64,000 nt of DNA from Auanema rhodensis (GCA_964057225.1 OZ059895.1:14384001-14448000), one strand, 5' to 3'; positions 10,101 to 31,930 are shown, counted from the stretch's first letter. Numbers and translations: made by a program. The notes: generated by a model not told the origin, from the letters alone.

Positions 10101-12323
10101 GTTTGTGCCTTAACCTCGCCCTTGGTATCGTTCCATACAAATTCAAATCATCGCCAATCACCCGTAGCGCCAATTGCGGCTTGGGATCTTGTTCGTTTCT
10201 GTTGTCTCCAGAGCCAGGCTAGGTTGGCTACTATACGTTCCTTATAGCCATCAGACAGCACCATCTGAAATCCATCTGTACTACATACCACACTTCTTTA
10301 GAAATTTGTGTTTTTGTCATTAAAATCATTATGAATTGCCTGTCTCATCATGAAGATGTTCAATATTTTGGTAATTCCGTCCCCTCCTTCTTTCTCTGAT
10401 CCTTCATATGTAACTCTAAATCAAAAATAGAGTGTAAACCTACTTTTAACTATAACATTTTGATGATGATAATTAGTAGACAAGTAATATTCCATTAACT
10501 ATAATTTATAGTTAACTAACCTATTCATATAATCAGATTTATGATTCTTCCTTCACTTTTCAAAAGCTTTTATTAACCTACAAGTCATCTAGTAGCCTTA
10601 TGCTCATCCATCGTCTGTCTGTCTCTCTGTCTGTCTCTCTGTCTTCTATACAGTCAAATACAAGCATGTGCTTGTAAAATATCTACATGACACATATATT
10701 CTTCTTCTTCTTTCTTATTTATATTCACATAAATAATCTTAAATGTTTGTTTACCGTAATCTATGATTCAAAATCTGAATGAACAAGTTACTAGTTGGCT
10801 GGTTCATATCAAGTTCAAACGAAATAGTCTAATGAGTCACGTGTATGACGCAATATTTCCGTGAGATTTCGTTCAAATTTCATTTTCAACCTGCTAATTG
10901 CACGAATCGGTTGGTTGTCACATATTACTTAGATCACTATTTTGCTTTTCAATTAATCTTAATTAAATATAAATAGTTAAAGAATACACTGAAAAATGAA
11001 AAATAATGCTCGTAATGCTCTTAATGCTCAAAATCCCACATTTCTGAAATGCTTTAAACTGATCGAAATATTTTGACATTTCGTTCTGTGTCATTTACAC
11101 GTAGAAACATAGAATTCTCGAAATCCAATGAGCAATTTACCTGTTTCTGAGGATTTATAACATCGTTTAGCTGTTTTATGGACCAACAGGGAGCAGGTTG
11201 GCCATTCACGAATTCATATCATGTCGTATCTTCTCATCCTTAATCGCTCATTATGTATCAGGCTAATGCTAGTTTGAATGAGAAATTAGAGTTTAATGGA
11301 GTATAATAGTAAATTAGAGAGGAATAGAGAAATAAAGAAAAATAAAAAGGTAAATTAGTTCTTGAACATGAAGTATTAAGCTCTAAGATGATACATTGGT
11401 CAGCTGGTTCAACAAATTTTATTTTATTTTCATTTGAATTATCTCATTGCTCATATAAACAGATAAACACGAATAGAATTATCAAAACTCTCTCTCTCTC
11501 TCCCTCTCCCTCTCCCTCTCTTTTTCCTGGTCCACACATCACCCCTTTTCTTTGCCTCTCTGTCAATGTTCCCTGCAATGCTCTGACTCTACAGCTCCAA
11601 CAGGTACTGCTGCTCCGAGCAGCTGATCGGCATTTCTAACAATTTAATTGAAATCGTTAAAAAACTTGTCAGACTACATCCAGAACTTGGAACCAATTCT
11701 TCAGTATCTTGACATCCGACATTCGTTTTTCAACGTTCGTCGTTTCTCTTTGAGCAAGCCCACCGTGAAAAGAAAAATGTATTTGCATCTGCCCCCACCC
11801 CTCAACCTCCTTCCTCCACTTCTTTAATTGTAAATTCCGTGTCTAAATCATATTCCCTCTCTTATGCCTTCTTTCCCTCTATTTGTCTCTCTCTCACTCG
11901 CCTTCTTCGTAAATTGGAAGCAAGATAGTGAGAAATAGAAGAGAGAAAGAGAATGAAAAGGAGTTTGTGTAGAAAACTTAAAAGAGAAAGAGAAATAGTT
12001 CCATATGGATCTAACTATACGGATGGTCAAAATGATGTTTTGTGAACTTTGACGAGAAAAAAACCTCTTTATGAGCTGTAATTCGTAAAGAATGTGTTAG
12101 TTTAAGTAAGTTAGCCTATACATGTGGTCTTATATGAAAATTAGAAGAAAACCATCTGATTTATTATGAAAATATCTCTCAAACTTTCATTTTTTCAATC
12201 AAAAAACACACATAAACATCTTGGTGACACTTCAACACACAATGACAAAGCTGTCACACAGTTCACAGGTGTATCAACTAACTTGAAGTCGAAATGAAAG
12301 CATCTGGAGAATGCTGAATCCGG

Positions 12324-12329
<6 letters not shown>

Positions 12330-12370
<41 letters not shown>
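12330..12370. repeat. (GA)n microsatellite
   Basis: About 20 uninterrupted GA units. Confidence 0.95.
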
Positions 12371-12372
<2 letters not shown>

Positions 12373-13170
12373 TAGAGAGAGAGACAATGGTAATCTAAAC
12401 AGATGAGTAAGGAAAACCAACATGGCTTTTCCTTACTCATTGCTTTCAATACCATCTATCTTCTAACTTTTTGGATTAATGAAGATGAGCAAAATCTTAG
12501 GCTCTACCGTAATATACCAACATTCTTCTACTAAATATCGTGCTTTTCCTTCAATTCTTTAATGAATTAGGAGAATATTGTAACGTCTTGTTGTCAACGA
12601 TGACCAGTTTGTCAACTATGTTCCTTTTCAAATCGTTCATTGCCTCATCGTATATCTTCTTTATTGCTTTTCTTTTTAACCAGGTGAGAGCAGTTCTCGA
12701 ACTTGACCGAACAAGCTCTTTCATCTCGCCGACATCTCTTAGCTTATCTTAACTAAACTCTGATTCACAGCTTCATTTCATTCCAAGAGAGGATTTTTCT
12801 AATCAGACCGATAGTTCTCAAACGTATTTCTTCACATCCTCATCATGATTTTCACTCTCATAATCTAACTGACACATTACTATACCTGACACCTTAAAAT
12901 CCAATTCCATCACTTCTTTTCTTCCTTTTTTTAACTTTTTTTCTCAAAAAAAAAGTTTTTATTTTCCTAATTCATTTATTCGTAGCTCATCTTCTCATCA
13001 TTACTCATCATCCAATCCATATGCGGTCGTCTGTATACGTCTTCAGCGGCAAAAGCATCTCCTTCGTCCTCCTCCTCTCCCACTACCTCTGTCTGTGTCA
13101 TCAGCATCAATCCTCATCAAATCATAAGCTTTTCTTTAATAAAGTTCATTCTTTTTCATTTCAAACATAC

Positions 13171-13256
13171 GTCTCCCTCTCTCTCTCTCTCTCTCCTCCT
13201 CCTCTCTCTCTCTCTCTCTCTCTCTCCCTCTCTCTCTTTCTTTTTTTTCTCTCTCT
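13171..13256. repeat. Interrupted (CT)n microsatellite / polypyrimidine tract
   Basis: Direct reading of sequence. Confidence 0.9.
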
Positions 13257-16232
13257 TTATCTAAATTCACGAGTCAAAAGCCAAGTGATGCAAGTGCTAA
13301 GAAGAGATATTCATCAACTTCTTCTTCGACAGCTCCAAAATTTCAGATTAAAAGCAGATGCTTCTAGATTATTTCCTCTCAATCTCACGCAAAACATTGT
13401 GAATTTTGATTTTTTCCTTTGAACCTTCGTTATTTTCTCATTTATTTTATGATTATTATTATAATATTTCAACTATTATTTCTTATTTCTTACAATTTCT
13501 TACAAGTTTCAAACTATTTTAGCTTTTGCTACCTTTTCTCTCCCAATTCGTACAAATGATTTCCATCCTTATTCAGAAGTTTCTTCTACAATTTTTCGAA
13601 ATTCACAGTATCGCTTTGCCATTCCGAACGAAAAACCTTTATTGACTTTTCCTCCGATTGATATACTACCGTAATCTGTGTGAACGGCTTTTCATCAGCT
13701 CGTTTTCCAATGTTGCCGTCTGGTTGGAGGAAATAGTCATCCTCCTTCCTCAGATTGAAAGAACTTCAGATTGATTTCGAGTGATTCAGAACATCTCCTC
13801 CCTATTCTCTCTCTACACCCCCACCCCCCCCCCCTCTCTCTCTCCCTCTCTCTCTCTCTCTGTCTTTCATTTTGAGACTTTGTGTCATTCAAATAGAAGA
13901 AAAGAAATTCAGATCATAAGAAGAAGGAGAACAACGACTTTGACGAGGAACAAGGAAAACTAGACGATAAGACCAAAATCGGAAAGTTTCGTTGTCGTCG
14001 TTCCGCTGTTGGTTACGGTCGTATAGCAAATAGACATAGATACCGTATCTGAAGTGAAAACCTGTAACAAGCCAAATGAATCGAGAAATGGACCAACAAT
14101 GTTGAATTGGACCTCAACTCGGTGTGATATACACTTCCCTATGTAGTTTTCAACCATTAAGCTTGTATCATAGCTAACCTGCGTCATATGATATCAGATG
14201 ATTCTATTAGTTTTGAGCAGATTTGCATCATAAATCACTGAGCTCCACCTCATTTGTTCTCATTCAGGAGGCGACGAAAATTCAAAACCAAACGAGATGG
14301 AAAGCCCGATTTGAATTGGTGAACTGTCGTTCATCTAAATAGCAAAGTATCCTTAAATGCTTTACTTAATTCAGAAGAAGGCTGTCGATAAACTGCTCTT
14401 TAACTGTCATTTTTGATCCAATTTAGATAACTTATAATGTGTCGACAACAAGCGGCCGCCTTTTATCTCTGGCGCCTACCTCATTACTACTTCATCCAGA
14501 CGATGATGTGTTCGCCGTTCAGTTGTCCATTTTCTAACACTTGGCTCGAACACTGTCTCGTCGTGATCTTCATCATCTTCACCTTCTCGCTTCTCTCACA
14601 TTCGTCGTTTTAGCTCCTCTCTAGTCTCTGTCGATCAAACAGTCGTAGGGTCTTCGTTTGTCGTCCAAGTGTCTAGCATATCGTTCTTGGTCTTGGTGTT
14701 AGTTCGTACATTCACGCAGAGGTAGCTGGATACGATAATCAGAATACTGACAGACATATTGACGACGATAATCAAAATCATTCAAAAATCTGGGAGAGAA
14801 GATGATGATCTTCGTCTGAATTCTATTGAAATTCGCAGTTCGACACAGAATTCTCTTCATCTGCCTTTGAAGTCATTGTCATCATAGTTGGGCATGTTCT
14901 TCATCGTAATCATGTCCTTATATAGACATATATCAACTGATTAGGAACGTACTGAAAGACATCTGAAGACCCGCACCATTTGAACCTGTCCTTTGATCTT
15001 CGCCGACAGTTTGAATTCACCCATATCTGTATATGTGGCACAGAAAATTGAAACGAAATTTGAATTTCAGCCTCTACAGCTCATCCAAACAGATTTTTGT
15101 TTTTAAAAATCTGAGTCAAACCCTCTAAACGATGTATTCCAAGAGCTGCTGAAATCCAAGCAGAAGTCATGGATCAGCACAAACAGAGGTCGAATGGCAT
15201 GGTGTCCAAGGTAACCTTGGAACGTTAAAGGTCGTCGTCGTCGTCTTTACATAGAATTTCAAACTCCAGATTCTACTTTGAACTATACTTTCCATTACTT
15301 TTTCATTCACTTAATTCACATCTTTAATCTTCTTCCGATTTCTTAAGATCATATTAAGTATGTACTTCAACTTGTAACACAAGATGTACGACTACATTGA
15401 TCCCTTTTTAAGCTTGTCAGTCACCTCATCAGCCTTGTGTTGTGAATGTCTAGTTGAATGAAGCTTGGGCGGCAAGATGAAAGGATAGCCAAGAAGCGCG
15501 ACATTCATAGCCTACGGTAACGAGCTTCCTTCTTCTCATTCCCTTTAACTCCATTCTCTCTTTCTCTCTCTCTCTCTCCCTCTCTCTCAATTTCAAATCC
15601 TATTTCCTGTGGTAGCTCCAGCTTTAACCTTCATCCACTTCCTCAATCTCTTGTAGTCTACCTGATTCTCATCTTATCCACTCTTTCTGATCCCAGCACT
15701 TTGCATTCTGCTTCTGTTCTTACCAACTCTAGTCGGGTCTTCGGACTCAGAGCCAAACCAGCCAGCCAGTCAACCAGCAGCTGCAGCTAGTGTGGTTCTA
15801 GTGCCCGCCCCTCTTGGCTTGTCTATCTTGCCTTGTCTACAACCCCTTTTCTCTTGTATCCATCTTTATGTTTTCTTCCTCTCTGTATTTCTCTGTTTCT
15901 CTCATCTTTCCCTTCACTCTCTCGTCTCTATCTCTCGTTATCTGCCTCCTTTCCAGCCTCCTTTTACTTACTTGCCTGCAGTCCTTCTCGGTCGTCCGTC
16001 CTTCTCTTCCGCTTCAAATTTGCCGTACAGAAAGCTTGATTCGCTCTCCTCCTCCTTTAGTTCCCGTAAAAACCTTTCTAATAACCATTTGAAGCGAAAA
16101 CTCTTGAGAAATCGAGTCTGTAAGCTATTTCAAATATTACCTAATGATCATCATCATGAGAACATCATGAGATATGTTTCCCATTTTATTCAACTTTCAT
16201 CACCCATCAACTCCCCGTTTCTCTCACACTAT

Positions 16233-16235
<3 letters not shown>

Positions 16236-16283
<48 letters not shown>
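16236..16283. repeat. (CT)n microsatellite
   Basis: About 24 CT units. Confidence 0.95.
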
Positions 16284-16284
<1 letters not shown>

Positions 16285-18059
16285 ACCCTCTATCTCTACT
16301 TTATTTTCATCTTAATCTGCACCTTAAAAACTTCTAATGTCATCAGCACATGGTTCTTTCAAGACATCCAATTCAGCTCTTCCCAATGATTTATATGTAA
16401 AATTTTAAAATAATTTCGCACAAAGCTATATGATATAGTTAAGAAAAATCTTCAAATAGTTTTAACCATGCTAGCGTCACCCTGTCTACCGTACAGGATG
16501 ACTTTCCCAGACATCAAATTTTCATTTTTTTTTCTTCTCATTATTTGGTGTCCGAATGATGATGATGATGATGATTCTACAACTACATAGAAGGTCATCA
16601 AACTCACTTTGATTATCTTCGTCCATATTTCCATCAACATCATCATCATGTAGCTGCTATTACAACTACTGTTTCATCATGTTAACAAGCTCTTAACTTA
16701 CTTAACACTCAAGCTTCTTCTTCAATTCATTTCATTCCTTTTATGTCTTTTCAAATATCATTTTCTCTTGTTAAAGGTCAGAAAAGATATTTACTTTTTC
16801 CAAACAAAAACTTTTAAATCAACATCAATATTTGATTTCAAAAGAAGCTTCTATCCACCACATTTTTTGCTTCTCTCCCCTTCATTCATTCTATTCTATT
16901 TATTTTTCTATAAAATTCATATACAAATATTCCATGATTGTATGATTTTCTCGAAAAAAAAAAGAAAAACTTTTATAACCATTGAAGCAATTATTCTCAA
17001 AAGTCAGTTTAGTATCATCCCGCTTCATCATCATCATCATCATCATCCCCTTTGTCGTCGTCGTCGTCGTCGTCATGGATGTCTCTATCACCATTCTTAT
17101 CACTATTCATTCATTTTCTGCTTCCTATTTCGAGATGTTTCTTCAAAAATCATCTTACAGATCTCTTTATAGATCATTTAACCTTTCTCTCATTCATTCA
17201 TTTATCAATTATATTCCACCAACTTCAACAACGAACTTCATTTCTGCGGAAAAATGAAGTGTCTTGTATAGGATGTCAGTTTCCTTCCTTGAATTTTCTA
17301 AGTTACACAAAGCAACAACTCATTTTCAGTGATGCTTCCCCATCTCTTTTGGCCAATTCTTTTTAAACTTTTCATGTTCTTGAACCTTTTCAATTGTTGT
17401 TGTTGTTTATTCTCTCATAATGTAGCCAAGTTTCAAAAGTTATTTAACTTCTTAAACCTTAATTAAACTCATATCTTCATCCTTTTCTCATCTCATTGAG
17501 AAAAATGGCAAAAAAACGATGAAGAAAACTAATATTATCCATTTAATTCCTCATTTACTGTGACAACTATAGCCATATATCCTTTTATAGTCCGATTTAC
17601 AATGGCTACCACCTCATTTCTCATCTCATCATCATCATCATCCTTTTACTCATCACACCCATTTAACTATAATTTCTTCTTTTTTTCCTTCTTTTCATAT
17701 TAAATTTTACTAATTCAACTTCATTTTCTTTTAATAATTTTCATATTTTTAGACCTTTAATCTCAACTTCTTCTTCTTCTTCTTCATCCTCAACAAGAGT
17801 TCTCTACACTTATACATAGACGAACAACAAGAGTAGGGTGATAGCTATCGAATACGGCGACATACATATACACACACACACACACACATACTTCCACAAC
17901 TACTACTACTACTGCTACTGCTATTGCTACTAAGAAGCAACGAATTCTGACTTCTATTCATTATAGCCAGTTTTGGACAAGAGCACGATATACTCTCCAA
18001 CGTCGTCAGGAGAGCTCCTCACAGCCTTAAACCAGCCAGCCAGTCGCAGCTGCATAATC

Positions 18060-18135
18060 TCTCAAGCCAATCAACACGACTGGCCCCGCCCACTCGCTAT
18101 TACGGTAGCTGGTGGTCCTAGAAGACTTTTTCACA
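18060..18135 (+). promoter_or_regulatory. Putative egl-5 proximal promoter / 5' leader
   Basis: CCAAT at 18067-18071, GC box CCCCGCCC at 18084-18091 and TACGGTAG at 18101-18108, in a locally GC-rich patch just before the ATG. Confidence 0.4.
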
Positions 18136-21100
18136 ATGAATCCAACAGCCACGACGGCAGCCACACTCTCTTTCGATTTTTCGGCTTCCAGTAGCCAACC
18201 GGAAGCTAACGATCATCTTCAGGTTTGAATTATTTAAATTTATAAGTTTTAACTTCGAAACGTATTTTAACTATATGTAAAAAATTATTATTTTAATCCC
18301 TAAACTATAAGAATAATTATAAAATTATATTTAAAATCATTATATGTAATAAAAAACTTCATTTATATAAAGAAAATACATTTGTTGAAGCTTAAATAGG
18401 CGTCAAATACCATTTGAGGAAACTTTAACGAGCTATGACACAACTCAAGTGCCAACTTGAGGTTTCAATTCGTTTTTCATTTGTAATTCAAATCAATGAC
18501 TTTCTCTCACAAAACTTCTTATACTCATTATTCACTCAAAATCAACAGCATTAGCAAAAAGATAATCAATATTCAGTATTTCTAGGGAAATTGAGATAGA
18601 AAAGCCTTTTCCACCTGGTTTTTCGGAATAATCTTCCCACAACCTAATTCATAGTTTTTTGCCTTAAAAACCAAATGTTCCTCGAAAATTATAGGTTACA
18701 GGATGTGGGAAAAAGAGGCGAAGCCTTGTTACATCTCGCTTGTTTCAAAATGAAAATTTACATTTGGTTTTCAACAAGCATACATACGACGACTACCTTC
18801 CCAAGTTTTATTCACATTTTACAGCATATCAACAGCATTTTTCAACTTGAAACTTTAACATATCACATATCTTTCTAATTCATTTTACATTTATATTAAA
18901 TTTAAATATTTAAATATATATATAAACTGATAGTTATTAATATGATTTTCAGCGATTGGCTGCGATGACTCAGGGTGTTGGCAAAGAAGATCCCGATCAA
19001 GCTACTGCTCCATCAACAGATGCTCTATACTCAGGTATAACTTTGTGTATTTTTAATTTTTATTTTAAATAATCGATTATATAAATATATATATTTCTAT
19101 ATTATAACTAAAATATAATAGTTAAAATGTTTAACAAGATATAATGGTGATTAGAAACGCTCATTGTTGCGAACTACCGTATCCAATTTCCACCAAATGT
19201 TATGTGATTCTTGTCGGCTGCTCGTTGATTTTGAGATCGACATTTGAAAGACAGAACTAATATATTGAAAAATATTTTGCCAACACTACCATTGGCCTTT
19301 TTTCATTTAAAATTGGCTGAAATTTTTCAAAAAAAAAATAATAATATAATTAGTTGAAGAATATTAATAATTAAAATTCTTATAAACATTCCTGAACATT
19401 GTAGCTCTAGCGCTAGCTCTAGCTCTAGCTCAATTCAATCATCTTATCATATCACAATGTTATTGATGCTATTCATCTTATTTCAGCTGGAGCTGCTGCC
19501 TATATGCCCGGATATGCTGGATGGCCTAACTACTATCAGCAGTTTGGCCAACCAGCTCTAGCTCCTGCAGCATTTTCTGCTTGGCCACCGCAATGCTATG
19601 CCACTCCACACTGGCCAAACTACGGTAGGTCTTACTTTACGTCATTTTACGTGAGAAAAAACAAAACAATTCAAATATTTAAAATCTCTTCTTGCTTTCT
19701 TTCATGTTTTTTCTTTCTTTTCATTTTTTTCTGTTTATCTGAAGTACTCTGTTACCTTCGTTAAATTATCGTTTCTTTTGTTTTTCTTCTCAATTTTCAT
19801 TTTATTTTAGTCTTCTGATGATTTAAAAAGAATCTGTTTAATGTTTCTTCTATTCTTGCGTTTATCCTATCCCCTTCCTCCTCTTCCCACTATCTCAATG
19901 CTCTTCTGACTAAACGTTCATACTGTCCTCGTTTGCCGACAACCCTTTCTACCTGATTTGCATAGAAAACTCGTTTTAATCATGGCCATATACGATTGCA
20001 CGCAACTTTATCTCCTCCTACGCCTTTTCTTTCATACACCCCTATGCATAACTTTCTTTTTGAAAAATTTTAATCGAATTCGTCTGATACAGTATGGTTC
20101 ACATGACCAGCCGGTTTGTTCAGTCTTTCTCAGTTACGTGAACTTTCTAAAGTTCACGTGACCTGACTAGGCATCATATACCTAACAACGTGAGCACGTG
20201 AACTCAGAATCTTCAAAATATCAGATTTTGAGATGATGTTTGATTATTATTCAACAATAATTGAAAACGTTAGAAATAGAAAATTTTTCATGAATTTGTG
20301 CTGTATTATAGTTTCACCACTAGCTTGATGTATCTTGTCCTTAAGCAAAAATGTCCTAAATGGCACTCTTCTCAACGCTGATTTATGACTAACTTCAATG
20401 CTGCATGACGAGTTGTCTCCATGATCCGTCTTTGCCAAGTCTGCTCTAACTTCCGACGGATGTGATGCTAGTTCTTGGCGTCGATCCCTCTGGTGATGAA
20501 GAGCGAGACGACGACGTCCGCATGAGATTAGAAGGCAGTGTATATCGTTCTCTCGCTATCCTGCAAGCTACAGCCTTCACATGGCATAGAGCAATATCCC
20601 ACATCAGTACCCGTCGACCCTCCCTATATTTTGCTTTCGTCCCTTGTCTTATTAGCATTTTTGAACATCTGCACTAAAATGATCATGAAAGGCTTTTGAG
20701 AGTAGCCGGGAGTCTGTGGCTTATACTGAGGGTAGTAAGCAGAGTAAGGGATAGGGGGGAGGGTTGAAAAAGAGATAGAGAGAAATCGAGAGAGATAGAC
20801 AAAGAGATCGGCAATGGTAGTGCTAAGAAAGGGAAAGGGTAAAGGGGTGCAACCGGGTTGAAAGACCAGAACATACATGGTGAGAATGGCTAATTATGCC
20901 TCGTTATGCTATCAGATGAATGGCCTTGATGGCTATTCAGGAGCTCGGTAGGCTAAAAAGCCTTCTGAACACGATTATTGTGAAGCCTTCGGGGGTAACT
21001 CATTCATGATCCAAATATATGATGATATATTGGACGTGTCTGATGATAGACATGGGAAAGCAGAAACAAATTCAATTGATATCAAAATTGGTTTCCAACT

Positions 21101-21953
21101 GCTTTTCACCTGTCACATCCACAGCCGCCTTAGTGCGTTGTCATGCTCTCTGCAACTTGTCTCCTTCTCCTCTCTTGCTTCTTAACTTGTGATCATTTTT
21201 CCCTTTCATCCTTATCCTTTTCAACTTCTTCAAATTGTTTTTATCAAAATTTTGATCGACTGATGTGCTTCTGATGCTTGTGCTCGTGTGTGCTCGCCCC
21301 TTCTAGTGTCTGGCGACGCCGCGACAGGCAAACACACGCGAGTAGCTTGCCCAGGAACCATCTCGAGCTTTAAAATACTTTTTGCTTTGTTTTAAGTACT
21401 TCCTCTAAACTAAGAGGAAATACAGAAACAATTCAATTCAAAGTCCCTATACTCACGTGTGTTTGTTGCAGCGGCTTCGAAGAAGGGTCGACAAACCTAT
21501 CAGCGGTACCAAACGTCTGTGCTGGAGCAGAAATTCCAACAGTCCAGTTATGTGTCCAAGAAGCAGCGAGAAGAGTTACGTCTTCAGACAAATCTGACGG
21601 ATAGACAGATCAAGATATGGTTCCAGAATCGCAGGATGAAAGCTAAGAAAGAGAAACAACGCATCGATGATCATGTAGATAGCCATTCTGCCCCACTCTT
21701 GCCTCCCAACCCTCCACCTAAAAACCCGGGAGCTGGCTCAGCACCTGGCGCTACATCCGGAATGCTTGTTGACGACGACAGTAAAAAGTGGTTGGATGCT
21801 ACCGTGGTCGCCAGTTCGGCGCCGCCACCAACCGCTGTTTGGCCCGGTCTACCGCATCCAACCACGAACCTGTTGAGTTTACAGGGTCAAGGTGGACCTC
21901 AAGCTCAAAACCAGCAACCAAATCAGCAGCATTCATACTATTGTCCACCATGA
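18136..21953 (+). CDS. egl-5: Posterior (Abd-B-related) Hox protein EGL-5, 262 aa; exons 18136-18222, 18953-19034, 19487-19624, 21472-21953
   Basis: All introns are GT-AG and phases join. Spliced protein: MNPTATTAATLSFDFSASSSQPEANDHLQ/RLAAMTQGVGKEDP.../...[82 protein letters not shown]...YYCPP. The segments NDHL.RLAAMTQGVGKEDP, WPNY, the homeodomain and terminal CPP match C. elegans EGL-5 as recalled. Confidence 0.97.
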
Positions 21954-23138
21954 GTGCCTCTCAACCATCTACTTGTGCTTGATGAAGACGTCGTGTCATA
22001 TGAGTTCATGAGTCTAGTGCACATGACCTCATAATTCATCAGATGACGTTGTCGAAGAACTTCAGATGTCAGCAGCATTATCATAACGTAACCCAGCCAC
22101 TTTATCATCAATAACAACAACGATTCCGTTCTAGTCAAGATCTTCGTATACGTCCAATCCAATGATTCCTACCACAACCCAGCCCCCAGCCCCTATTTTA
22201 CCTACAAACAGACACAGACACACATATATAGACATGCACATACACATCGTAACCTGGTTTTTCTAAAATCCAAGTTAAAAAAAAATTTTTTTTTGTATTT
22301 CTATGACATTTACAAACATTTTTTCTTCTTCTTTTTTTTTCTGAGCAATTAATTATCTTAATTACAAAACAAAAAATTAATTTTACCCCATTCATCCATC
22401 AATTCTTCCTCTCATCTTCAATCGTTTTTTCTGATTTTGAATTACCTAATTTCATTTATCTAGTTAATGTATATCGTTCTTTCAAAACTATTTTAGAAGA
22501 CTTTCGTCTTCACAATCTCCTGCCCGGTTTTTACGTTATTTCCACTTACCGTAATCCAATTATTCATTACTTAAGTCAAGCTTATTCTATTCTGATTCTC
22601 GTCTTCTTATACTTTCACCTGATTTTCCTGGATATGTATATGCTACTTCATCTCCTTTCCATCTACCAAACATCCCCCTTTTTCAAACCATTATCTCGTT
22701 TCTCAAACTATAGTAACCATATATTCACGTACATCGGCAACCAGACTCCCGTTACCTTTCCTATCCCCCCCCTCCACTCCCTCCCACACATCTTCTTATA
22801 GGTATTGATATTATTCCATTAACTATATATATATATAATATAATATATATTTATACATATACAGCAGTTCTCCATATAATATGCTTTTTAATTGATTTTT
22901 ATAATCAATTATTCAATAATCTGTATGTCCGTCCGTCTTTTCTTCCTCCATATATGGTCATTCGACAGTCGGGTTCTCAATTTTTCAAAATATTTGTGCT
23001 TCATCACCCATCATCGTCTTCGTACTTTGTTTCATATAACAACAAAAAAATGTTAACTTTAGCCCATTTTCTTCCATTTCTTTTACTTTTATGCTGTTTA
23101 TTTTCTTCTTTCCGAGAAAAATATTCATTTAATCCTAT

Positions 23139-23144
23139 AATAAA
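23139..23144 (+). terminator. Candidate polyadenylation signal of the egl-5 terminal exon
   Basis: AATAAA ending a ~1.2-kb pyrimidine-rich 3' UTR-like stretch, ~300 nt before the ant-1 acceptor. Confidence 0.5.
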
Positions 23145-23448
23145 TCAATTTTTCAAACACTAACTTCCACATTTGTGTGTAAAATTTTAATAATTTGAGA
23201 AGATTATATGCTCGAAGTAGAAGTACAATGATTGAGATTTTCAAAACGTGAAGCTGAATCTAGTCGAGTAGGGCTGAACCGCACACAGTTACAATCAGAT
23301 TCAGCTCATAATAAGACAACACAATGATTCTAGATTATAGCATAGTATTCAACTATATCACATTAACTATATTACATATAATTATAATAATACAATTGAT
23401 TACAAGGAAATTATTTGTCGGAAATAACTATTTTTCCTCTTTTTTCAG

Positions 23449-23732
23449 TCGCTGAAATTTGCAAAAAACGTGGCCGACAGACCTACACTCGACATCAGAC
23501 CTTGGAATTGGAAAAAGAATTTCATTACAACAAATATCTAACCAGAAGGTATGTTTCTTCCTCCTTATCAATCATCAACATCAATTTCAGAAGACGTATT
23601 GAGCTGAACCGTACATTAGGCTTATCCGAGCGTCAAATCAAAATTTGGTTTCAAAATCGTCGAATGAAATTGAAAAAAGAAAACAAAGGCTGTGATGGAT
23701 CAGCTCCAGATTCCACATCATCGAACTCATAA
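23449..23732 (+). CDS. ant-1: Antennapedia-class (central Hox) homeobox exons 23449-23548 and 23591-23732; no own start codon, probably alternative 3' exons joined to egl-5 exons 1-3 (182-aa product)
   Basis: Strong acceptor TTTTTCAG at 23441-23448 and a 42-nt GTATGT..TTTCAG intron. Spliced homeodomain [60 protein letters not shown] is 49/60 identical to Drosophila Antp as recalled. RGRQ and RRRRIE distinguish it from MAB-5 (RTRQ, RKRRQE). Confidence 0.9.
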
Positions 23733-24046
23733 ACACGAATGTTTCACTTCAACTGTATATATACATAGACCTAAAGCATAGACATGTGTAGGCAATAATC
23801 ACGTTGTATCTGAATTTGAGCTCCAAAAAAGCTCTAACTGCCATATTAACGAAGTCCACTGACCCTAGTCCATACACTTGTACTTCATTGATCTCATCAC
23901 TTGCAAATTTTGATTTTGCCATTTCATTACTTCAAGTTTGTTAAACTTTTAAGGAAAATGTTGTCTTTTCATTATCCTTGTCATATATGTCACTTTTATG
24001 TATTTATTTCATTATTTGATGGCTGTCTGTATACAGGCAACTTGAA

Positions 24047-24103
24047 AATAAAATGCTTTCAGTCTCTTGTCTTGTCCCAATTCCCGACGTCTTTTTCAAT
24101 AAA
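24047..24103 (+). terminator. Candidate polyadenylation signals of the ant-1 terminal exon
   Basis: AATAAA at 24047-24052 and 24098-24103, 315-370 nt after the stop. Confidence 0.5.
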
Positions 24104-25099
24104 TTCTTGATTTGGAGAATATACTACCGTATGAACTACCGTAATCATTATATATATGAAGAATAGAGAAAAGAAATGAAAAGCAGAAACGAAAAAGGTA
24201 ATTGCTTTAGTGAATGAAAGCATAGATAGAGAGTTGGAGAGGAGAGGGAGACAGGGGGCAGCGCAGCCGCGAGAGAGACACACGGCCAAAAGAAAATAAT
24301 ATGCGAAGAGGAGGAGGAAGAACTACAGTGTACCATTGATTCAAAATTAAAAGTTATTGAAGTTAAGGGAAGCGAACTAAGAAGAAGGGAAGAGGAAGGA
24401 AGACGACATATAGAAACCTTCAGATGATTTTTCAAGATGACCATTCTAATGAAAACGAGACAAAAGACTCATTTTGAATTTTGGCGCCCACGTCATCAGA
24501 ATCGAAGGTTTAATGTGATTTCATTGGATGACCATTACAAACTGATGCCAAACGAATTACAAAGAGTGATGAAGAAAGATGTAATTGAATATTCGTAGAA
24601 GGAAGTTCATGCGTGAACATCCTTCAATAAAGGTAAAACTTCGTTGGTAATAGCAAATGATATCACCTCATATTCACTTGACTTAAAGACAAATGTTTTG
24701 AGAAGAAATGACGAGGTTGGGAGAGTAAGCTCAATCTGTTGACATCGACAAGAGTAAAGAGCTACAGTAATCCATACTACTGACTTTGCTTTATGAATAG
24801 AAGTGAGTAGAACGAGAGCCGACCAAGGAAAAGCAGGAAGAAAATGGCAGAGAGAGAGAAAACAGATAGAGGGACTAGAGAAAAGAGGTAAATGGTGTGT
24901 GGAAACACAGGATAGAACAGAAAGAAAAGAGAAAGTCGTTGCTTTGCTGGCTCCTTTTATGGCCATAATACTCATTTCCTAGTGACGGAGACAGAAGTCT
25001 AATAGCTTTTTTCCCTCTTCATATTCATGAGACTAAATACAGGATTAGATTAGTTCAAAACTAATCGGGAATATATAGAGAGAGTGAAGATAAAGGAAG

Positions 25100-25132
25100 A
25101 GAGAGAGGGAGAGAGAGAGAGAGAGAGAGAGA
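25100..25132. repeat. (GA)n microsatellite
   Basis: Direct reading of sequence. Confidence 0.9.
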
Positions 25133-26670
25133 GTGATATCGAGTGTAAGATATGTGTACATGTTGATTATACATCGCGCTATAATCTAAGCAATGTCTGC
25201 GACTAAAGCTTTGATCAACTGATACCTAGACATCTGATACTACCGTAATCCTAAAAAAAAGAAGGAATCCCCATGGAATCAACGACAGTTTCTATATCTG
25301 GACGGAATCTCCATCTGCTAGAGTCTTATATGCCTTAAGGGGAAAGACAAGTGAAGGCTTTGTCAGGCAGGCGAATGAGAATCCAAGGAACGACCAGCAA
25401 AAAGCGAAAAAGACACAGCGAATCTAGAGACAGAAGGACGATGAAGGCACAGAATCAGCTCCAAAATGCAGCCAGATATGGCTGATGACTATAAATTGGA
25501 TGCGCAAATGGCGCGTTTTATGTGATTTCTGAAATGGCTTACTGGTAGAATGGCTACTGCACGTCGTCTGTAGTGCAAAGAAGCTTCAGAACAGATCGAT
25601 TTACTGGATTTCATCTTGTCAGAGATGAATTCGGGAATGTCTTCTGCTTCTCATCAGGTTCAAGTTGTAACCTCTAATTATACTTCCAACTTAGGCTACT
25701 ATGAGCAAAGGATTAGCGAAGAAGATGAAGTCAAGTAAGCAGTTTAGAGTTGATCGTTCTAGTCTTTACGTAACAACATTCTCTCTTACACCTTCCGGTT
25801 CCATTCGCATAGCTTTTTCTGCCAAAAAAAAACGTTGGTCACCGGAACAAGACGACGACATCGTGACGCCTTCTATGGTAATTCTAGTAGATTGTGTTAT
25901 TTCGTCCCAGGAACACGACCATGAGTATAATTGGAGAGCAGACAGTATAGAAAAGGGATATAGAAGTATAAAATTGGATGCAAAAAATACAATCTAGAAT
26001 AGATATTGCGAGAATAATCGGTTGTAATTGAATATGAGATGTTGTAATTCTGAATTCCTAGTTAGTACACACGATTTGCAACATGGAAGAAGGGAAAGGC
26101 AAAGAAAAATCTACAGTATCTTGGGCGATCAGTACTAAGAAATGCAAAACACGCAACATCTAGGCTATAAAGAGCATGACACGGGAGAGGCAAAATTCAT
26201 CAAAATTGCATCACCTACTAAAATAATAATAATTTCTTGAAAAACTAAAGGCAATAAGTTGGGTTATATATAGGTAGGTTGCTGGATAAGCTTGTTGGTG
26301 AAAACAAGTTGGGAAATGCAAAATTCTCGTACCGGCCTCGTATCATCCGAAGAATAACTAGCAGCAGGGGGGCCCGGTTTACCACCATCACCACAAATAC
26401 ACATGAAACTGCTCCTCCTTTTTATTCTTATAATTGGCCATCAGTCTATTTTATGGTATTGGCCCAATATGCCTGACGAACTCACGATTACATGCAGTCT
26501 TTCTTCTACACATTCAACGCAGGTGATGCTCGTTAAGAAAATCTGCTGGGGTTCCTAGGACAACTATTCTAACGTTCCCCTGTATGAAATCATAAACTCA
26601 CTGTACAATTATTTTATTTCCCGTAAAAAAGGCAAGAAAAAGCATAAACTCTAACAAAATTATCATCTAA

Positions 26671-29600
26671 TCAAGACCAATCGTCATCATCATCTGCATT
26701 ATCTTCATCTGCAGTTCGTCTTCGTTTGGGCTCCAAAAAGTATTCGCTGATATCCGGCTTCGGGTGTTTGTCGAAAGCCATATGTGTCTTTTCAGCATCC
26801 CGGAATGTATCACTTGATAGATTTACCTTAAGACAATAAGAATAACCCTATATTCAAGTGATATAACATACTTGTCCTAAAACATCTAACTTTCTCTGAA
26901 TCATATCCCAGATAATATCATCAGCTGTGTGACGGGCTACCAAATACTGTACAAAAACTGAATCCTTTTGTCCTACACGATGTGCTCGATCTTCTGCCTG
27001 AACACTACTGTTAGAAAACATTTAGAAGTGAGAACATACTTGAAGAAGAGTTCCTGGATTCCAATGTAATTCAGCGAATACGACAACAGTCGCGGCCGTT
27101 AAAGTAATTCCAACACCTGCAGATGTTACTGATAGTACAGCTACCATCACATCAGGATCTTCCTAGAAATAGAAAAACATTTAAAAAGCGGTGAACATGT
27201 TTAGAAAGAACCTGGAATGATTTACATAGTTCTCCTCTTCTATGACTAGGCGTTGTTCCATCTATTCTAATACATTTCAAATTCTTTTTTTGAACCTAAA
27301 CGAATCGCCTTAATCTTCTAAGTATTAATGATTGCACATACTTCAACCATAATTGTATCTAAAACAATCTGATGATGAGCAAAAATCAAAACTTTTCGAG
27401 GAGGAGCATCACTATAGAAATAGTTGTCAATAATATGACTACACACAGCTGCCGCCTAAAATAAATGTATAAACTTATGCTGTATACGGCTTATTACTTT
27501 TACAATTCCTGTCATACTGAAATACTCAAGTAGTGAATCATGTCCATCATTTTGATTCTAAAAATCTATTTTTTAGGAAAAAGATAAACTCTTTGTCTTA
27601 CACTAGAATTGTTATTTCTTTCAAACGCCTGCTTAGCTTTAAGTAGACCGTCCATTCGATCATTAATCGAATCGCCAGATAGATATACAACCTTGAGCAT
27701 ATTTATGTTGTTGGAAAGTTCTTCGAAATTGTTTTACCTCTCTTCGTTTATCGGGGAGATCTTTAAGGACATCATTCTTCAATCTTCTAATCATAACTTT
27801 TTTCATCAAAATAGCTGCTAATTCCTCACTGTTAGTGCATCCTTTAGCCTTTAAATTGACTTTACTTTATAATGATGGATTATTCGATATATACTTCGAA
27901 ACAGAATCGTCCTTGTTTACCATCACAGTACCTGATCGCAAACTGCTGGAAATTTGGGAATAATCTCTGGTTAATTATGCGAATTTGAGAAAATAATTCA
28001 GCTGGACGAGAAAGAGCAGGAGTACCAGACAACATAATCACCCGATTTGCTATTCTCTGAAAGACGAATAAAACTATGCTCTTTCGTATTAGCTTACAGC
28101 GAGATCAGTAGCAACTTGAGTTCTTTTGGCTTTCGAATCTTTGAGTAAGTGACATTCATCCTAAATAAACTAATTAATATTAATTACAGTGATTCTATGT
28201 TACCAATATAATTACTTGATAAGCTAATTTAGCTAATTCTTTATGTTTCAAGACCATTTGATCATATGATATTATAACTACCTGAATTTTAAATTAATAT
28301 ACGAATTATATTAATATTTTACCGTATTAGATGTTCTCATGTCAGGCATAGGATCAGAGCCTTTTTCGATTACAGAGATCCTATTGATGATAGGTAAAAA
28401 TGTATTAAATTGCTGAAATAAAGAAAATCTGAATAAAACATACTATTTCTAAATTACGATTTTCCAAGCATATTTTACAGAAGAAGGACAAACGATGAGC
28501 AAAGGCCACTCTGATCTGAAAAGCATATCAAAAGAAATGGATAAAAAGAAAAGATAGGTAATACCTGTAATATCTTGCAACAGTTATAGCTTGCAACGAT
28601 TTTCCCAGCCCCATTTCATCAGCTATAATAACTCTGCCTCGTCTTTCCAATGCAAAGCTAAACAATTTGGAGATCAAGTATTAGTGCATGAATTACTTCT
28701 TAATTACATTACTCCATCTTTTTGATAAGGGAAGAGAACTTTGACTAATGTAGGATCCATCATTACAAATAAATTATTTGGAATAGCTTCTTTTCTATCA
28801 TCGGCTAATAAACTTAAAACTTCTATAGGAATATTTACAACTGATACATTAACTTCCTGAAATATAGTTGTATTATAGTTCAATTATGAAGGAGATATCT
28901 GCCTCACTGTTAAATTAGATAAAGAAGATTCCAACTTCTTCATTTCTGAATATTTTACACTCCAAATTTTTTCCTTTTCATCATAAAATCGATTATCCAT
29001 TGGTAAGCATTTAATTGTATTCACAATTGCAGAGTGAAACGGTTGCATTTGAATCTAAAATCTATTCATATCATGCTATATTTTCTTCAGACAGACCTTA
29101 AACCGATCAGAATTGAAAATTTTGAAAGTTACTACGATGTTAGGCTTGGGCAGATGGGCATTTGATCCAGAAAATATTGGAGCAATCTCAAATAGTATTT
29201 CTATGTTTTTTTTATCAGAAAAGAAACAACCTTTTTAACAGGTAATGGAGGATGTGCAACAGTATTAGATTGTTTTAGAGGCTGCTACAGATATTATTTC
29301 GTTTAATTTTTCAAAGAAACTAACTTTATAAAATAGCGTACTATCAGTAGGTTTATATGAATTTGAATTTGGGGGAATATTTACTATATTACTTTTTGCT
29401 ACGCTCAGAGGAGCAGAACTATTAACATTCTGAACAAAATTATTTTCCTTAAAACCTTGGATATAATCACCTGCTTAGCCTGCAATGACTTCGGTAAAGT
29501 GGCAGCAACAGGATCAAACGACGCCTGAATTCAGCATGGCGTTATAAAAGATTAAGATTTAACACGGAAGACTAACCGTTTGCACGTTCCCACCCGTTGT

Positions 29601-30126: not shown

Positions 30127-31649
30127 TTAAAAAACTATCTTCCATTTAGCTGGCTGCTCACACTCTTTCTCATCGTCTCCACACATACGATTGAATGTTG
30201 TTTCAGGTTTAAATCCTAGAATTTCTCTATCTTCTTGTATTCTATAAGAGAAGGTCGAGACATGGCTTCCGGTGAAATATCTAGCATGTGAACAGATAAT
30301 CTAAGAATAAAATATTACGAAAAAAGATTAAGAATTTCTTACCTGATCAACTATGGCAATCTCTCCATCAGTTAAATCTTCATTTGTAAAGGTAAAAACC
30401 TCACTCTTGACCAACTTTTTCAAATCTTTAAGCTCATGTGCTTCTGCATCAGTTGCCAGAAATACTTTGCTAACTTTATACTTTTGAGCCAAATCATTGA
30501 GCTAAAATGTGTCTTTTGAGAAATTGAATTATGAAGAATTTTACAATTTTTGCTGTTCCTTTAATCGAAGGCAAATTGTTACCGTGAGCTCTTAAAAAGT
30601 CTCTTCTCCGCCAGTGTGCACAAATGTAGGGACCACCTACAGCATTTCTATTTGAAGTTTCATCCCTCCAGGATGGAGGAAGAATTGTTTGATCGGATTC
30701 ATCGTTCGATCCCAATTGCAAATTTCTACAAGGACTAATTAGTAAAAACTCTGATAAAGTAATAACTACCTAAATTCTTGAGCTATATTGACAAGGTGGT
30801 TAGAATAGCGCATACTTCTACGAGCTCGCCAATATTGAACTCCACCATATTCTTCATGAAGAATCGTCTCTCCACGATCAATAAAAATGCTGGTTGAATT
30901 TGGATATATTTTCATAATTAGATCTCTTAAAGTTCCTGATTCCCCTTGAATAGAAACGCATTCAAAGTTATTGGCTTGAACATTTGAATACGAGAAAAAC
31001 CATCCATTCCTAGAAATTTCGAAAATTTTTCAACGGAAAATATGTCTTACCATTTCGCAGTATCTTTATTAAACCTATAATACTTCTGTCCATCCAAACA
31101 ATCTCTTTGGTCGAACTTCAATTCATAACTAGAGCCCCAACCTTCAATATAATGTTGAAGATAAACAACATTGTCAATAATTCCATCCGGATTTTCTTAA
31201 AGCATAAATCATATTGAAACTTTAAAAGATAAATGAAACCTTCCAAAAATTGTTCAAACTCTATAACAGGTACAAAATCATTTAAACTATCTAAATCAAA
31301 GAAAAATTTCCACGGAACTTTAGTTTTTTGTCTGTTCCAATGAAATAATCCTCCCCATGGAGGTAAAACAAGCACATAATTCTCTCCTAAACAATATAAT
31401 TAATTTATAAGAATGTAAAAGTATCAAATCACCTAATTCTCGAAGTAAACGGACACTATTAGCAATTCTCATATAAACATCCCGTCTTAGATTAAAACCT
31501 TCTCCACGATTAGCATCATATATCAAATATTTCCTTTCTTTAGCTATGCTGTATTTGCTTTTATCTACTTTTGAAACTGTATCATCCGCATATATGTGTA
31601 AAACCAGAAATATCGTTATCCATAACAATACCCTCATACCTATATGCAT
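30127..31649 (-). CDS. pad-2: GDP-fucose protein O-fucosyltransferase 2 (POFUT2)
   Basis: Signal peptide, then [71 protein letters not shown] and [11 protein letters not shown]. The start could be 31637. Confidence 0.95.
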
Positions 31650-31930
31650 ATATACATTTCAAATATATAAAGAAGCATAAGTATATAAAACGATTTTCAT
31701 TACTCATTCTCACAATTAAAACAATTTTATTAAAAAAATTTAATTAAAAAAAAAGAAAAGTGACTAGATAAAACGAATATCACAAAAAATGGATATTTAA
31801 GAAGAACGTATAAAGCATCACAGTCAAAAGCACTATTTCTACTACTGGTTACACCAGACTAACAGTGAAAGTGGGCATTTTGCCTTTTGATAGATCAGTA
31901 GTAAAGCTTGCGTGAAAACAACGAAAATTA

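What the first reader, a model, noticed from the sequence alone, without database searches (positions are those of the whole stretch)
18136..23732. One Hox N-terminus, two homeodomains: egl-5 and an Antp-class homeobox look like alternative terminal exons
Seen: egl-5 exon 3 ends in phase 1 (TAC G|GTAGGT at 19624). Both the EGL-5 homeobox exon (GTTGCAG|CG GCT TCG AAG AAG, 21472) and the downstream Antp-class exon (TTTTTCAG|TC GCT GAA ATT TGC AAA AAA, 23449) open in phase 1 a few codons before their homeodomains. They give WPNY-AASKKGRQ and [15 protein letters not shown]. The Antp exon has no upstream in-frame ATG and no YPWM exon. Only ~300 nt of AT-rich DNA lie between the egl-5 AATAAA (23139) and its acceptor, and each terminal exon has its own AATAAA. 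The distal acceptor is a better consensus match than the proximal one. Inference: competition between splicing and polyadenylation selects a posterior-class or central-class DNA-binding domain from one promoter. Established, from memory: shared 5' exons of egl-5 and ant-1 were reported in the filarial nematode Brugia malayi, and C. elegans lacks ant-1. The same architecture in a rhabditid-like genome would make it an ancient conserved system, and the C. elegans gene loss would be the loss of an alternative last exon.
Basis: partly seen in the sequence, partly recalled or inferred. Interest (0 to 1): 0.92.

Follow-up and report, generated by a model that had tools for sequence, protein, structure and literature searches.

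The report
egl-5/ant-1 two-homeodomain Hox locus
A roundworm Hox gene (egl-5) is followed by a second, start-less homeobox (ant-1) placed so that both can be spliced onto the same front half; this layout, shown by cDNA only in Brugia malayi, recurs in every ant-1-bearing nematode genome I checked, but no RNA evidence could be obtained for this genome.

Summary
Three egl-5 N-terminal exons end in phase 1 at 19624. Phase-1 acceptors stand at 21472 (EGL-5 homeodomain) and 23449 (Antp-class ANT-1 homeodomain, two exons). AATAAA signals lie at 23139, 24047 and 24098. The ANT-1 exon has no ATG and no hexapeptide exon.

The window comes from an Auanema-like rhabditid (clade V).

The same layout occurs in eight genomes of clades III, IV and V: same strand, phase-1 donor after HWPNY, phase-1 acceptor just before the ANT-1 homeodomain. 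In 7 of 8 no in-frame ATG lies upstream of that acceptor.

ANT-1 is under strong purifying selection, so it must be translated. In this genome that needs an upstream coding exon with a phase-1 donor. The egl-5 exons are the only candidates found.

This is the arrangement shown by cDNA in Brugia malayi in 2003, so it is a new member of a known kind.

Alternative splicing here is therefore a strong inference, not a demonstration.

The scan had already noted the ANT-1 homeobox on this same window (s1-418681), not on other DNA.

The parts
18136..18222 (+). egl-5 exon 1 (ATG, 29 codons, phase-0 donor)
   Evidence: The protein start MNPTATTAATLSFDF is identical to Auanema sp. JU1783 P0001.
18953..19034 (+). 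egl-5 exon 2 (82 nt; its donor is also phase 1)
   Evidence: The translation matches P0001. BLASTN block against L001.
19487..19624 (+). egl-5 exon 3, ending ...HWPNY + G|GTAGGT (phase-1 donor). Proposed shared donor for both homeodomain exons.
   Evidence: The donor TAY G|GT is conserved in all eight ant-1-bearing genomes, and also in C. remanei and P. pacificus, which lack ant-1.
21449..21471 (+). 3' end of intron 3: GU-rich element (ACGTGTGTTTGTT) next to the weak proximal acceptor ttgcag
   Evidence: Nearly identical in the window, JU1783, T. colubriformis and N. americanus. Absent in the ant-1-less C. remanei and P. pacificus. A regulatory role is inference.
21472..21953 (+). EGL-5 (Abd-B-like) homeodomain plus C-terminal exon, including the stop at 21951-21953
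   Evidence: Pfam Homeodomain, E 1.2e-19. 84% identity to the JU1783 EGL-5 protein; C. elegans EGL-5 is among the hits.
21954..23160 (+). Putative egl-5 3'UTR, with its only AATAAA at 23139-23144
   Evidence: The 3' end itself was not observed.
22954..22974 (+). Perfectly conserved 21-mer (starts with ATG) in otherwise unalignable DNA. Function unexplained.
   Evidence: Identical at L001 13766-13786. No hairpin. No Rfam match. Absent from the other loci.
23449..23548 (+). ANT-1 homeobox exon a (phase-1 acceptor, VAEICKK + homeodomain residues 1-28, phase-2 donor)
   Evidence: Acceptor and codon-level conservation begin exactly at 23449.
23591..23732 (+). ANT-1 homeobox exon b (homeodomain residues 29-60, short tail, stop at 23730-23732)
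   Evidence: The intron position is shared by all five clade V species.
24047..24103 (+). Two AATAAA signals (24047, 24098), 316 and 367 nt after the ANT-1 stop
   Evidence: The 3' ends were not observed.

Best explanation
This is the egl-5/ant-1 complex Hox locus of an Auanema-like rhabditid nematode.

One promoter and three 5' coding exons encode a 102-residue N-terminus that ends in the Trp motif HWPNY. These exons feed a phase-1 donor at 19624.

That donor can join either of two terminal exon sets:
- The proximal set (21472 onward) carries the posterior-class EGL-5 homeodomain, a conserved C-terminus ending in CPP, and a poly(A) signal at 23139.
- The distal set (23449-23548 plus 23591-23732, poly(A) signals at about 24050-24100) carries the Antp-class ANT-1 homeodomain. 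Using it means skipping the proximal acceptor and poly(A) site.

The two products would be about 260 and about 181 residues. They would share the N-terminus and differ in the DNA-binding domain.

Shown here: the exon anatomy, phases and signals; orthology and conservation of the layout; purifying selection on ANT-1; and the lack of any start codon or private 5' exon for ANT-1 in this genome.

Inferred: the 19624->23449 junction itself (by homology with the Brugia malayi cDNA result), and any regulation of the choice.
For: (1) Anatomy and phases are confirmed.

(2) The same tandem layout occurs in eight genomes. Each has a TAY G|GT phase-1 donor and a phase-1 acceptor 3-12 codons before the ANT-1 homeodomain. 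The genomes are:
- clade V: the window, Auanema sp. JU1783, C. auriculariae, T. colubriformis, N. americanus
- clade III: Loa loa and a spirurid-like Logan contig
- clade IV: S. carpocapsae
.

Fused gene models show the same gene order in nine genomes (T. colubriformis, counted above, plus eight more):
- strongylids: T. colubriformis, H. placei, D. viviparus, C. oncophora, A. costaricensis
- clade III spirurids: B. pahangi, W. bancrofti, O. ochengi, T. callipaeda
.

(3) ANT-1 compared with JU1783 has dN 0.027, while 36.5 of 42.5 synonymous sites differ. Third-position changes start at the first codon after the acceptor, and the DNA upstream of it does not align.

(4) No in-frame ATG lies upstream of the acceptor in 7 of 8 genomes. 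The Met inside the exon (VAEMC in JU1783 and C. auriculariae) is Ile here.

(5) tblastx found no frame-specific coding exon, and a motif scan found no hexapeptide-like motif, in the introns, in the intergenic DNA or in 12 kb upstream.

(6) PMC11603191 reports that the Brugia malayi egl-5 and ant-1 homeodomain exons are alternatively cis-spliced to the same 5' exon, with ant-1 placed after egl-5.
Against: No EGL-5N::ANT-1 protein, annotated or transcript-derived, appeared in any of three searches: by the N-terminus, by the ANT-1 homeodomain within 72-227 aa, and against the 1.84-billion-protein representative library.

Phase compatibility alone is weak evidence, with about a 1 in 3 chance.

The split codon reads Val whether its G comes from the egl-5 donor or from the acceptor's own AG. 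That codon therefore does not discriminate.

S. carpocapsae has an in-frame ATG four codons upstream of the acceptor, and two species have a Met inside the exon. Independent translation is therefore possible in some lineages.
Confidence: 0.68

Rival explanations
1. ant-1 is an independent gene with its own small or fast-evolving 5' exon that I failed to recognise. One candidate is the conserved 21-mer at 22954-22974. It begins with ATG and would end in phase 1 (19 nt, then GT).
For: The 21-mer is perfectly conserved between the window and JU1783, where synonymous sites are saturated. ATG plus 19 nt followed by GT gives the right phase for 23449 (read).
Against: The putative donor is very poor: GTTCTC here and GTCTCT in JU1783. 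All 19 nt are invariant, which points to a nucleic-acid-level constraint rather than a coding one. The element is absent from the six other ant-1-bearing loci, several of which also lack an ATG. tblastx found no conserved coding exon.
Confidence: 0.1
2. ant-1 is the downstream cistron of an operon-like unit. The 23449 acceptor would be a trans-splice site that receives SL1 or SL2 after cleavage at the egl-5 poly(A) site.
For: The genes share a strand. AATAAA lies 310 nt upstream of a consensus UUUUCAG acceptor. Cis and trans acceptors look alike in nematodes (general knowledge). JU1783 and C. auriculariae have a Met four residues into the exon, and Steinernema has one just upstream.
Against: In this genome a trans-spliced RNA would have no AUG before helix 3 of the homeodomain. 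The domain is nevertheless under strong purifying selection. The spacing from AATAAA to the acceptor varies from 120 to 646 nt among species. Brugia cDNAs showed cis-splicing.
Confidence: 0.1
3. The locus makes one protein with two homeodomains. A weak T|GT donor in the Cys codon of the C-terminal CPP motif would splice the EGL-5 exon onto the ANT-1 exon, as many public gene models predict.
For: Nine automatic annotations contain an EGL-5 homeodomain followed by an ANT-1 homeodomain: T. colubriformis, O. ochengi, B. pahangi, T. callipaeda, W. bancrofti, H. placei, D. viviparus, C. oncophora and A. costaricensis. In six of them (the four clade III spirurids, H. placei and D. viviparus) the junction fits this donor, judged from the protein sequences. 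That donor is phase 1, and it also exists here as TAT T|GTCCAC.
Against: The donor matches the consensus only at GT. The CPP(NI)-stop ending is conserved in every EGL-5 examined, which argues that it is the true C-terminus. The fused models place the junction differently from species to species, and one contains translated intron (P0121). That is typical of ORF-maximising predictors.
Confidence: 0.05
4. The ANT-1 homeobox is a decaying relic that is no longer expressed in this lineage.
For: It has no ATG, and the Met found in relatives is lost (VAEMC to VAEIC). No transcript-derived ANT-1 protein was found.
Against: The reading frame, both splice sites and all 60 homeodomain residues are intact. 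dN is 0.027 against saturated synonymous change.
Confidence: 0.04

Closest known systems
Brugia malayi Bm-egl-5 / Bm-ant-1 (Aboobaker & Blaxter 2003, as summarised in PMC11603191)
   Same: ant-1 homeobox immediately 3' of the egl-5 homeobox on the same strand. Shared 5' coding exon(s). Phase-1 donor and acceptors (seen here in the related filariae Loa loa and B. pahangi). ANT-1 has no N-terminus of its own.
   Different: Brugia has cDNA proof; this genome has none. This is a free-living clade V rhabditid. Its N-terminus is split into three exons and its ANT-1 homeobox carries a 42-nt intron at homeodomain codon 29, which clade III loci lack.
Alternative last exons (skipped-terminal-exon type) in general
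   Same: Two terminal exon sets, each with its own acceptor and poly(A) signal, downstream of one donor.
   Different: Here the alternatives encode two different, anciently diverged paralogous DNA-binding domains (Abd-B class versus Antp class), not variant tails.
Nematode operons with SL2 trans-splicing
   Same: Same-strand genes with a few hundred nt between the poly(A) signal and the next acceptor.
   Different: The downstream unit has no start codon in this genome, so it cannot be a free-standing cistron.
Shared 5' exons among vertebrate Hox genes, e.g. HOXC4/5/6 and Hoxa9/a10 transcripts (from memory, not checked here)
   Same: Neighbouring Hox homeobox exons reached from a common upstream exon.
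   Different: In most of those cases the shared exon is non-coding, or the isoform is minor. Here the shared part is the whole conserved N-terminus.

Membership tests
Brugia-type egl-5/ant-1 shared-5'-exon Hox locus | Antp-class ant-1 homeobox directly 3' of the Abd-B-class egl-5 homeobox, on the same strand | tested here: met
   The gap from the egl-5 stop to the ant-1 acceptor is 1495 nt.
Brugia-type egl-5/ant-1 shared-5'-exon Hox locus | Orthology of both homeodomains to nematode EGL-5 and ANT-1 | tested here: met
   EGL-5 exon: 84% identity to the Auanema EGL-5 protein, with C. elegans EGL-5 among the hits. ANT-1: nearly identical to the homeodomains downstream of egl-5 in filariae and strongylids.
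Brugia-type egl-5/ant-1 shared-5'-exon Hox locus | The donor of the shared exon is frame-compatible with both homeobox acceptors | tested here: met
   All are phase 1. This is conserved in eight genomes.
Brugia-type egl-5/ant-1 shared-5'-exon Hox locus | ant-1 lacks its own initiation codon and N-terminal exon | tested here: met
Brugia-type egl-5/ant-1 shared-5'-exon Hox locus | cDNA or RNA junctions from the shared 5' exon to each homeobox exon | not testable with these tools
No such protein was found.
Nematode operon (downstream SL-trans-spliced cistron) | The downstream unit is a complete ORF that starts with AUG after the trans-splice site | tested here: not met
   There is no AUG before helix 3 of the homeodomain in this genome.
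Nematode operon (downstream SL-trans-spliced cistron) | SL2 or SL1 leader on the downstream mRNA | not testable with these tools
   No reads could be laid.
Alternative last exons | Each terminal exon set has its own acceptor and poly(A) signal | tested here: met
   Acceptors at 21472 and 23449. AATAAA at 23139, and at 24047 and 24098.
Alternative last exons | Both terminal exon sets are used in mature mRNAs | not testable with these tools

The most novel reading that the evidence does not exclude
The one-N-terminus, two-homeodomain egl-5/ant-1 unit is ancestral to all Rhabditida (clades III-V), and it is a regulated switch rather than a stage in gene decay.

In clade V the weak proximal acceptor is governed by the conserved GU-rich element ACGTGTGTTTGTT. 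The independent ant-1 losses in crown Caenorhabditis and in Pristionchus would then be losses of an alternative terminal exon. Each loss would be accompanied by loss of that element and, in C. remanei, by a consensus proximal acceptor (tttcag).
Probability: 0.3. Interest if true: 0.65.

Novelty: new member of a known kind. Interest (0 to 1): 0.45.

Why it matters
If the junction is confirmed, one Hox transcription unit delivers a posterior-class or a central-class homeodomain on the same N-terminal and Trp-motif scaffold. This would be in a culturable free-living relative of C. elegans, not only in a filarial parasite.

That would make three things experimentally testable:
- how Hox specificity depends on the homeodomain alone;
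- how Hox genes are lost, as loss of an alternative exon rather than of a whole gene;
- how gene annotation should treat this locus.

On the last point, current public annotations call ANT-1 either as a headless fragment or as an artificial two-homeodomain fusion.

Tried and rejected
From then on I worked beside those places and sent none of their letters to any search tool.

(2) Searches for an annotated or transcript-derived EGL-5N::ANT-1 protein found none. One Logan protein (P0032) is a chimera, so such contigs are unreliable at homeoboxes.

(3) A hidden ANT-1 5' exon or hexapeptide. tblastx of the introns, the intergenic DNA and 12 kb upstream against relatives gave only nucleotide-level matches in all frames to JU1783, and nothing to more distant species.

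(4) The 21-mer as a miRNA: no hairpin on either strand in either species.

(5) The Val split codon as evidence for the egl-5 donor. I rejected it because the acceptor's own G gives the same codon.

(6) The C. elegans egl-5 locus could not be fetched. The Steinernema hermaphroditum ant-1 locus also failed. The 2003 Current Biology paper is not held.
Full report
**Observation**

I read 17800-24400 and rebuilt the gene model in scripts.

The egl-5 5' exons are 18136-18222, 18953-19034 and 19487-19624. They sum to 307 nt, so the donor TAC G|GTAGGT at 19624 is phase 1. The exon 2 donor at 19034 is phase 1 as well.

The proximal acceptor at 21472 continues as AASKKGRQ and runs to a stop at 21951-21953. 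The distal acceptor at 23449 continues as [11 protein letters not shown].

The distal homeobox is split by a 42-nt intron, between 23548 and 23591, in homeodomain codon 29. It ends at 23730-23732.

Pfam puts the proximal exon on the whole Homeodomain profile. It puts the two distal exons on profile positions 1-27 and 29-57.

AATAAA occurs at 23139, 24047 and 24098 only. A motif scan finds just these two homeoboxes in the 64 kb.

**Organism and neighbours**

The best match of the EGL-5 exon is an unnamed protein of Auanema sp. JU1783, at 84% identity over the full length. Its 102-residue N-terminus has the same length as mine and is nearly identical to it.

The JU1783 contig (L001) is collinear with the window for more than 20 kb. 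This stretch includes a downstream SNF2-type helicase gene and an O-fucosyltransferase gene.

Synonymous sites between the two genomes are saturated. The window is therefore a related rhabditid of clade V (Rhabditidae), not the same species.

**What is known**

PMC11603191 makes three relevant points:
- In Brugia malayi ant-1 lies after egl-5, and the two homeodomain exons are alternatively cis-spliced to the same 5' exon. It cites Aboobaker and Blaxter 2003.
- ant-1 is present in most Rhabditomorpha, including most strongylids, and in C. monodelphis.
- ant-1 is absent in C. elegans and P. pacificus.

That paper does not examine whether the shared-exon layout extends beyond Brugia, and Auanema is not among its species.

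**Comparative test of the layout**

I fetched egl-5 or ant-1 loci from:
- Auanema sp. JU1783 (L001)
- T. colubriformis (L002)
- a spirurid-like Logan contig (L003)
- Loa loa (L004)
- N. americanus (L005)
- C. auriculariae (L006)
- S. carpocapsae (L007)

In all seven, as in the window, three features recur:
- The N-terminal coding region ends HWPNY with TAY G|GT.
- The EGL-5 homeobox exon opens in phase 1.
- A second phase-1 acceptor stands 3-12 codons before an ANT-1 homeodomain, 170-2150 nt after the egl-5 stop, on the same strand.

C. auriculariae thus keeps ant-1 downstream of egl-5, although no gene is called there.

Fused EGL-5+ANT-1 gene models show the same gene order in nine species:
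- strongylids: T. colubriformis, H. placei, D. viviparus, C. oncophora, A. costaricensis
- clade III spirurids: B. pahangi, W. bancrofti, O. ochengi, T. callipaeda

Within the flanks read, C. remanei (6 kb) and P. pacificus (8 kb) have no ANT-1 homeobox downstream of egl-5.

**Must the ANT-1 exon be translated, and from where?**

Against JU1783 the ANT-1 coding sequence has dN 0.027, while 36.5 of 42.5 synonymous sites differ.

In the pairwise alignment, third-position differences begin at the first codon after the acceptor. The DNA just upstream does not align. The exon is therefore coding from its first base.

Reading upstream without splicing meets a stop before any Met in 7 of 8 genomes. 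Only Steinernema has an in-frame ATG, four codons upstream.

JU1783 and C. auriculariae have a Met inside the exon (VAEMC). Here it is Ile. The strongylid and clade III loci (Loa loa, the Logan contig) have no Met there either.

A trans-spliced or unspliced RNA from this genome could therefore start translation only inside helix 3.

A motif scan of the + strand from 10000 to 23449 found no hexapeptide-like motif.

The only phase-1 donors preceded by a conserved ORF are those of egl-5 exons 2 and 3.

**What could not be done**

The decisive test is junction reads.

The cap then blocked a second try.

Searches for an EGL-5N::ANT-1 protein found none. Public ANT-1 models are headless fragments of 73-102 residues with junk N-termini, or two-homeodomain fusions.

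Absence there is weak evidence. Hox mRNAs are rare, and Logan contigs can be chimeric at homeoboxes (P0032).

**Mechanism**

The best-supported reading is a skipped-terminal-exon type of alternative last exon.

The 19624 donor pairs with 21472, followed by cleavage after 23139. Alternatively it pairs with 23449, which makes 19625-23448 a 3.8-kb intron, followed by cleavage near 24070-24120.

The shared N-terminus ends in HWPNY. Its Trp would then sit about ten residues before either homeodomain, where posterior Hox proteins carry their PBX-contact Trp. That is inference from general knowledge.

The competition between proximal polyadenylation and distal splicing is plausible but untested.

**Two conserved non-coding elements may bear on the choice**

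First, the last ~20 nt of intron 3 are almost identical in the window, JU1783, T. colubriformis and N. americanus, despite saturated divergence. They contain the GU-rich core ACGTGTGTTTGTT followed by a weak G/T-interrupted acceptor.

C. auriculariae has a related GU-rich tract. The two ant-1-less species lack the element altogether, and C. remanei has a plain tttcag acceptor. With only two independent losses, this is a lead and not a result.

Second, a perfect 21-mer at 22954-22974 is shared with JU1783. It lies in the putative egl-5 3'UTR, upstream of the AATAAA in both genomes. It forms no hairpin and matches no Rfam family.

**Rivals**

A private ant-1 first exon made from that 21-mer (ATG plus 19 nt, then GT, phase 1) is formally possible. 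Three things count against it:
- its donor is very poor;
- its invariance is at the nucleotide level, not the codon level;
- it is missing from the other loci.

An operon-like trans-spliced ant-1 fails on the missing start codon in this genome.

The two-homeodomain fusion of the public models uses a T|GT inside the conserved C-terminal CPP codons. It looks like a predictor artefact.

Decay is contradicted by the selection data.

**Verdict**

The kind of system has been known in Brugia since 2003, so this is a new member of a known kind.

- The layout, including splice phases and the headless ANT-1 exon, is shared by all eight ant-1-bearing genomes examined, across clades III, IV and V.
- It includes a basal Caenorhabditis species, C. 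auriculariae.
- Within the flanks read, the ANT-1 homeobox is gone in the two ant-1-less lineages examined.

Interest is moderate.

Noticed in passing
window 22954-22974 (= L001 13766-13786): A perfect 21-nt island beginning with ATG, in otherwise unalignable 3'UTR/spacer DNA. It lies upstream of the AATAAA in both genomes. It forms no hairpin, has no Rfam match, and is absent from six more distant loci.
   Followed up: partly
window 21449-21471; L001 about 12592-12614; L002 about 4828-4850; L005 about 8309-8331: A GU-rich core (ACGTGTGTTTGTT) abuts the EGL-5 homeobox acceptor. It is conserved from Auanema to strongylids. It is missing in C. remanei (L008) and P. pacificus (L009), which lack ant-1. 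It may be a splicing-regulator site.
   Followed up: partly
L006 13249-13348 and 13899-14004 (Caenorhabditis auriculariae): An intact two-exon ANT-1 homeobox lies 1.4 kb downstream of egl-5, with no gene called there. This basal Caenorhabditis species therefore keeps ant-1.
   Followed up: partly
P0121, P0002, P0356, P0352, P0354, P0362, P0364, P0371, P0373: Public gene models in nine species fuse the EGL-5 and ANT-1 homeodomains into one protein. Most do so through a weak T|GT donor in the C-terminal CPP motif. These are probably annotation artefacts. No model joins the EGL-5 N-terminus directly to ANT-1.
   Followed up: partly
window 19919-20019, 20449-20533, 20644-20709, 21248-21448 (intron 3); 8233-16619 (upstream); 24914-25578 (downstream): Blocks conserved with JU1783 at the nucleotide level in all reading frames, in gene-free DNA. 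They are likely Hox enhancers. None is conserved with more distant species, and none matches Rfam in the parts searched (17000-26100).
   Followed up: partly
P0032 (Logan protein): An EGL-5 homeodomain that switches after NRRMK to a Dfd/Hox4-like tail (WKKDHKLPNTK). This is probably a chimeric de Bruijn contig formed across the conserved helix-3 sequence, so short-read contigs should be treated with caution at homeoboxes.
   Followed up: no
window 26103-28793 and 30136-32428: A SNF2-family helicase gene and an O-fucosyltransferase gene, called on the minus strand in L001, are collinear with the JU1783 contig. Local synteny therefore extends beyond the Hox unit.
   Followed up: no
   Followed up: no
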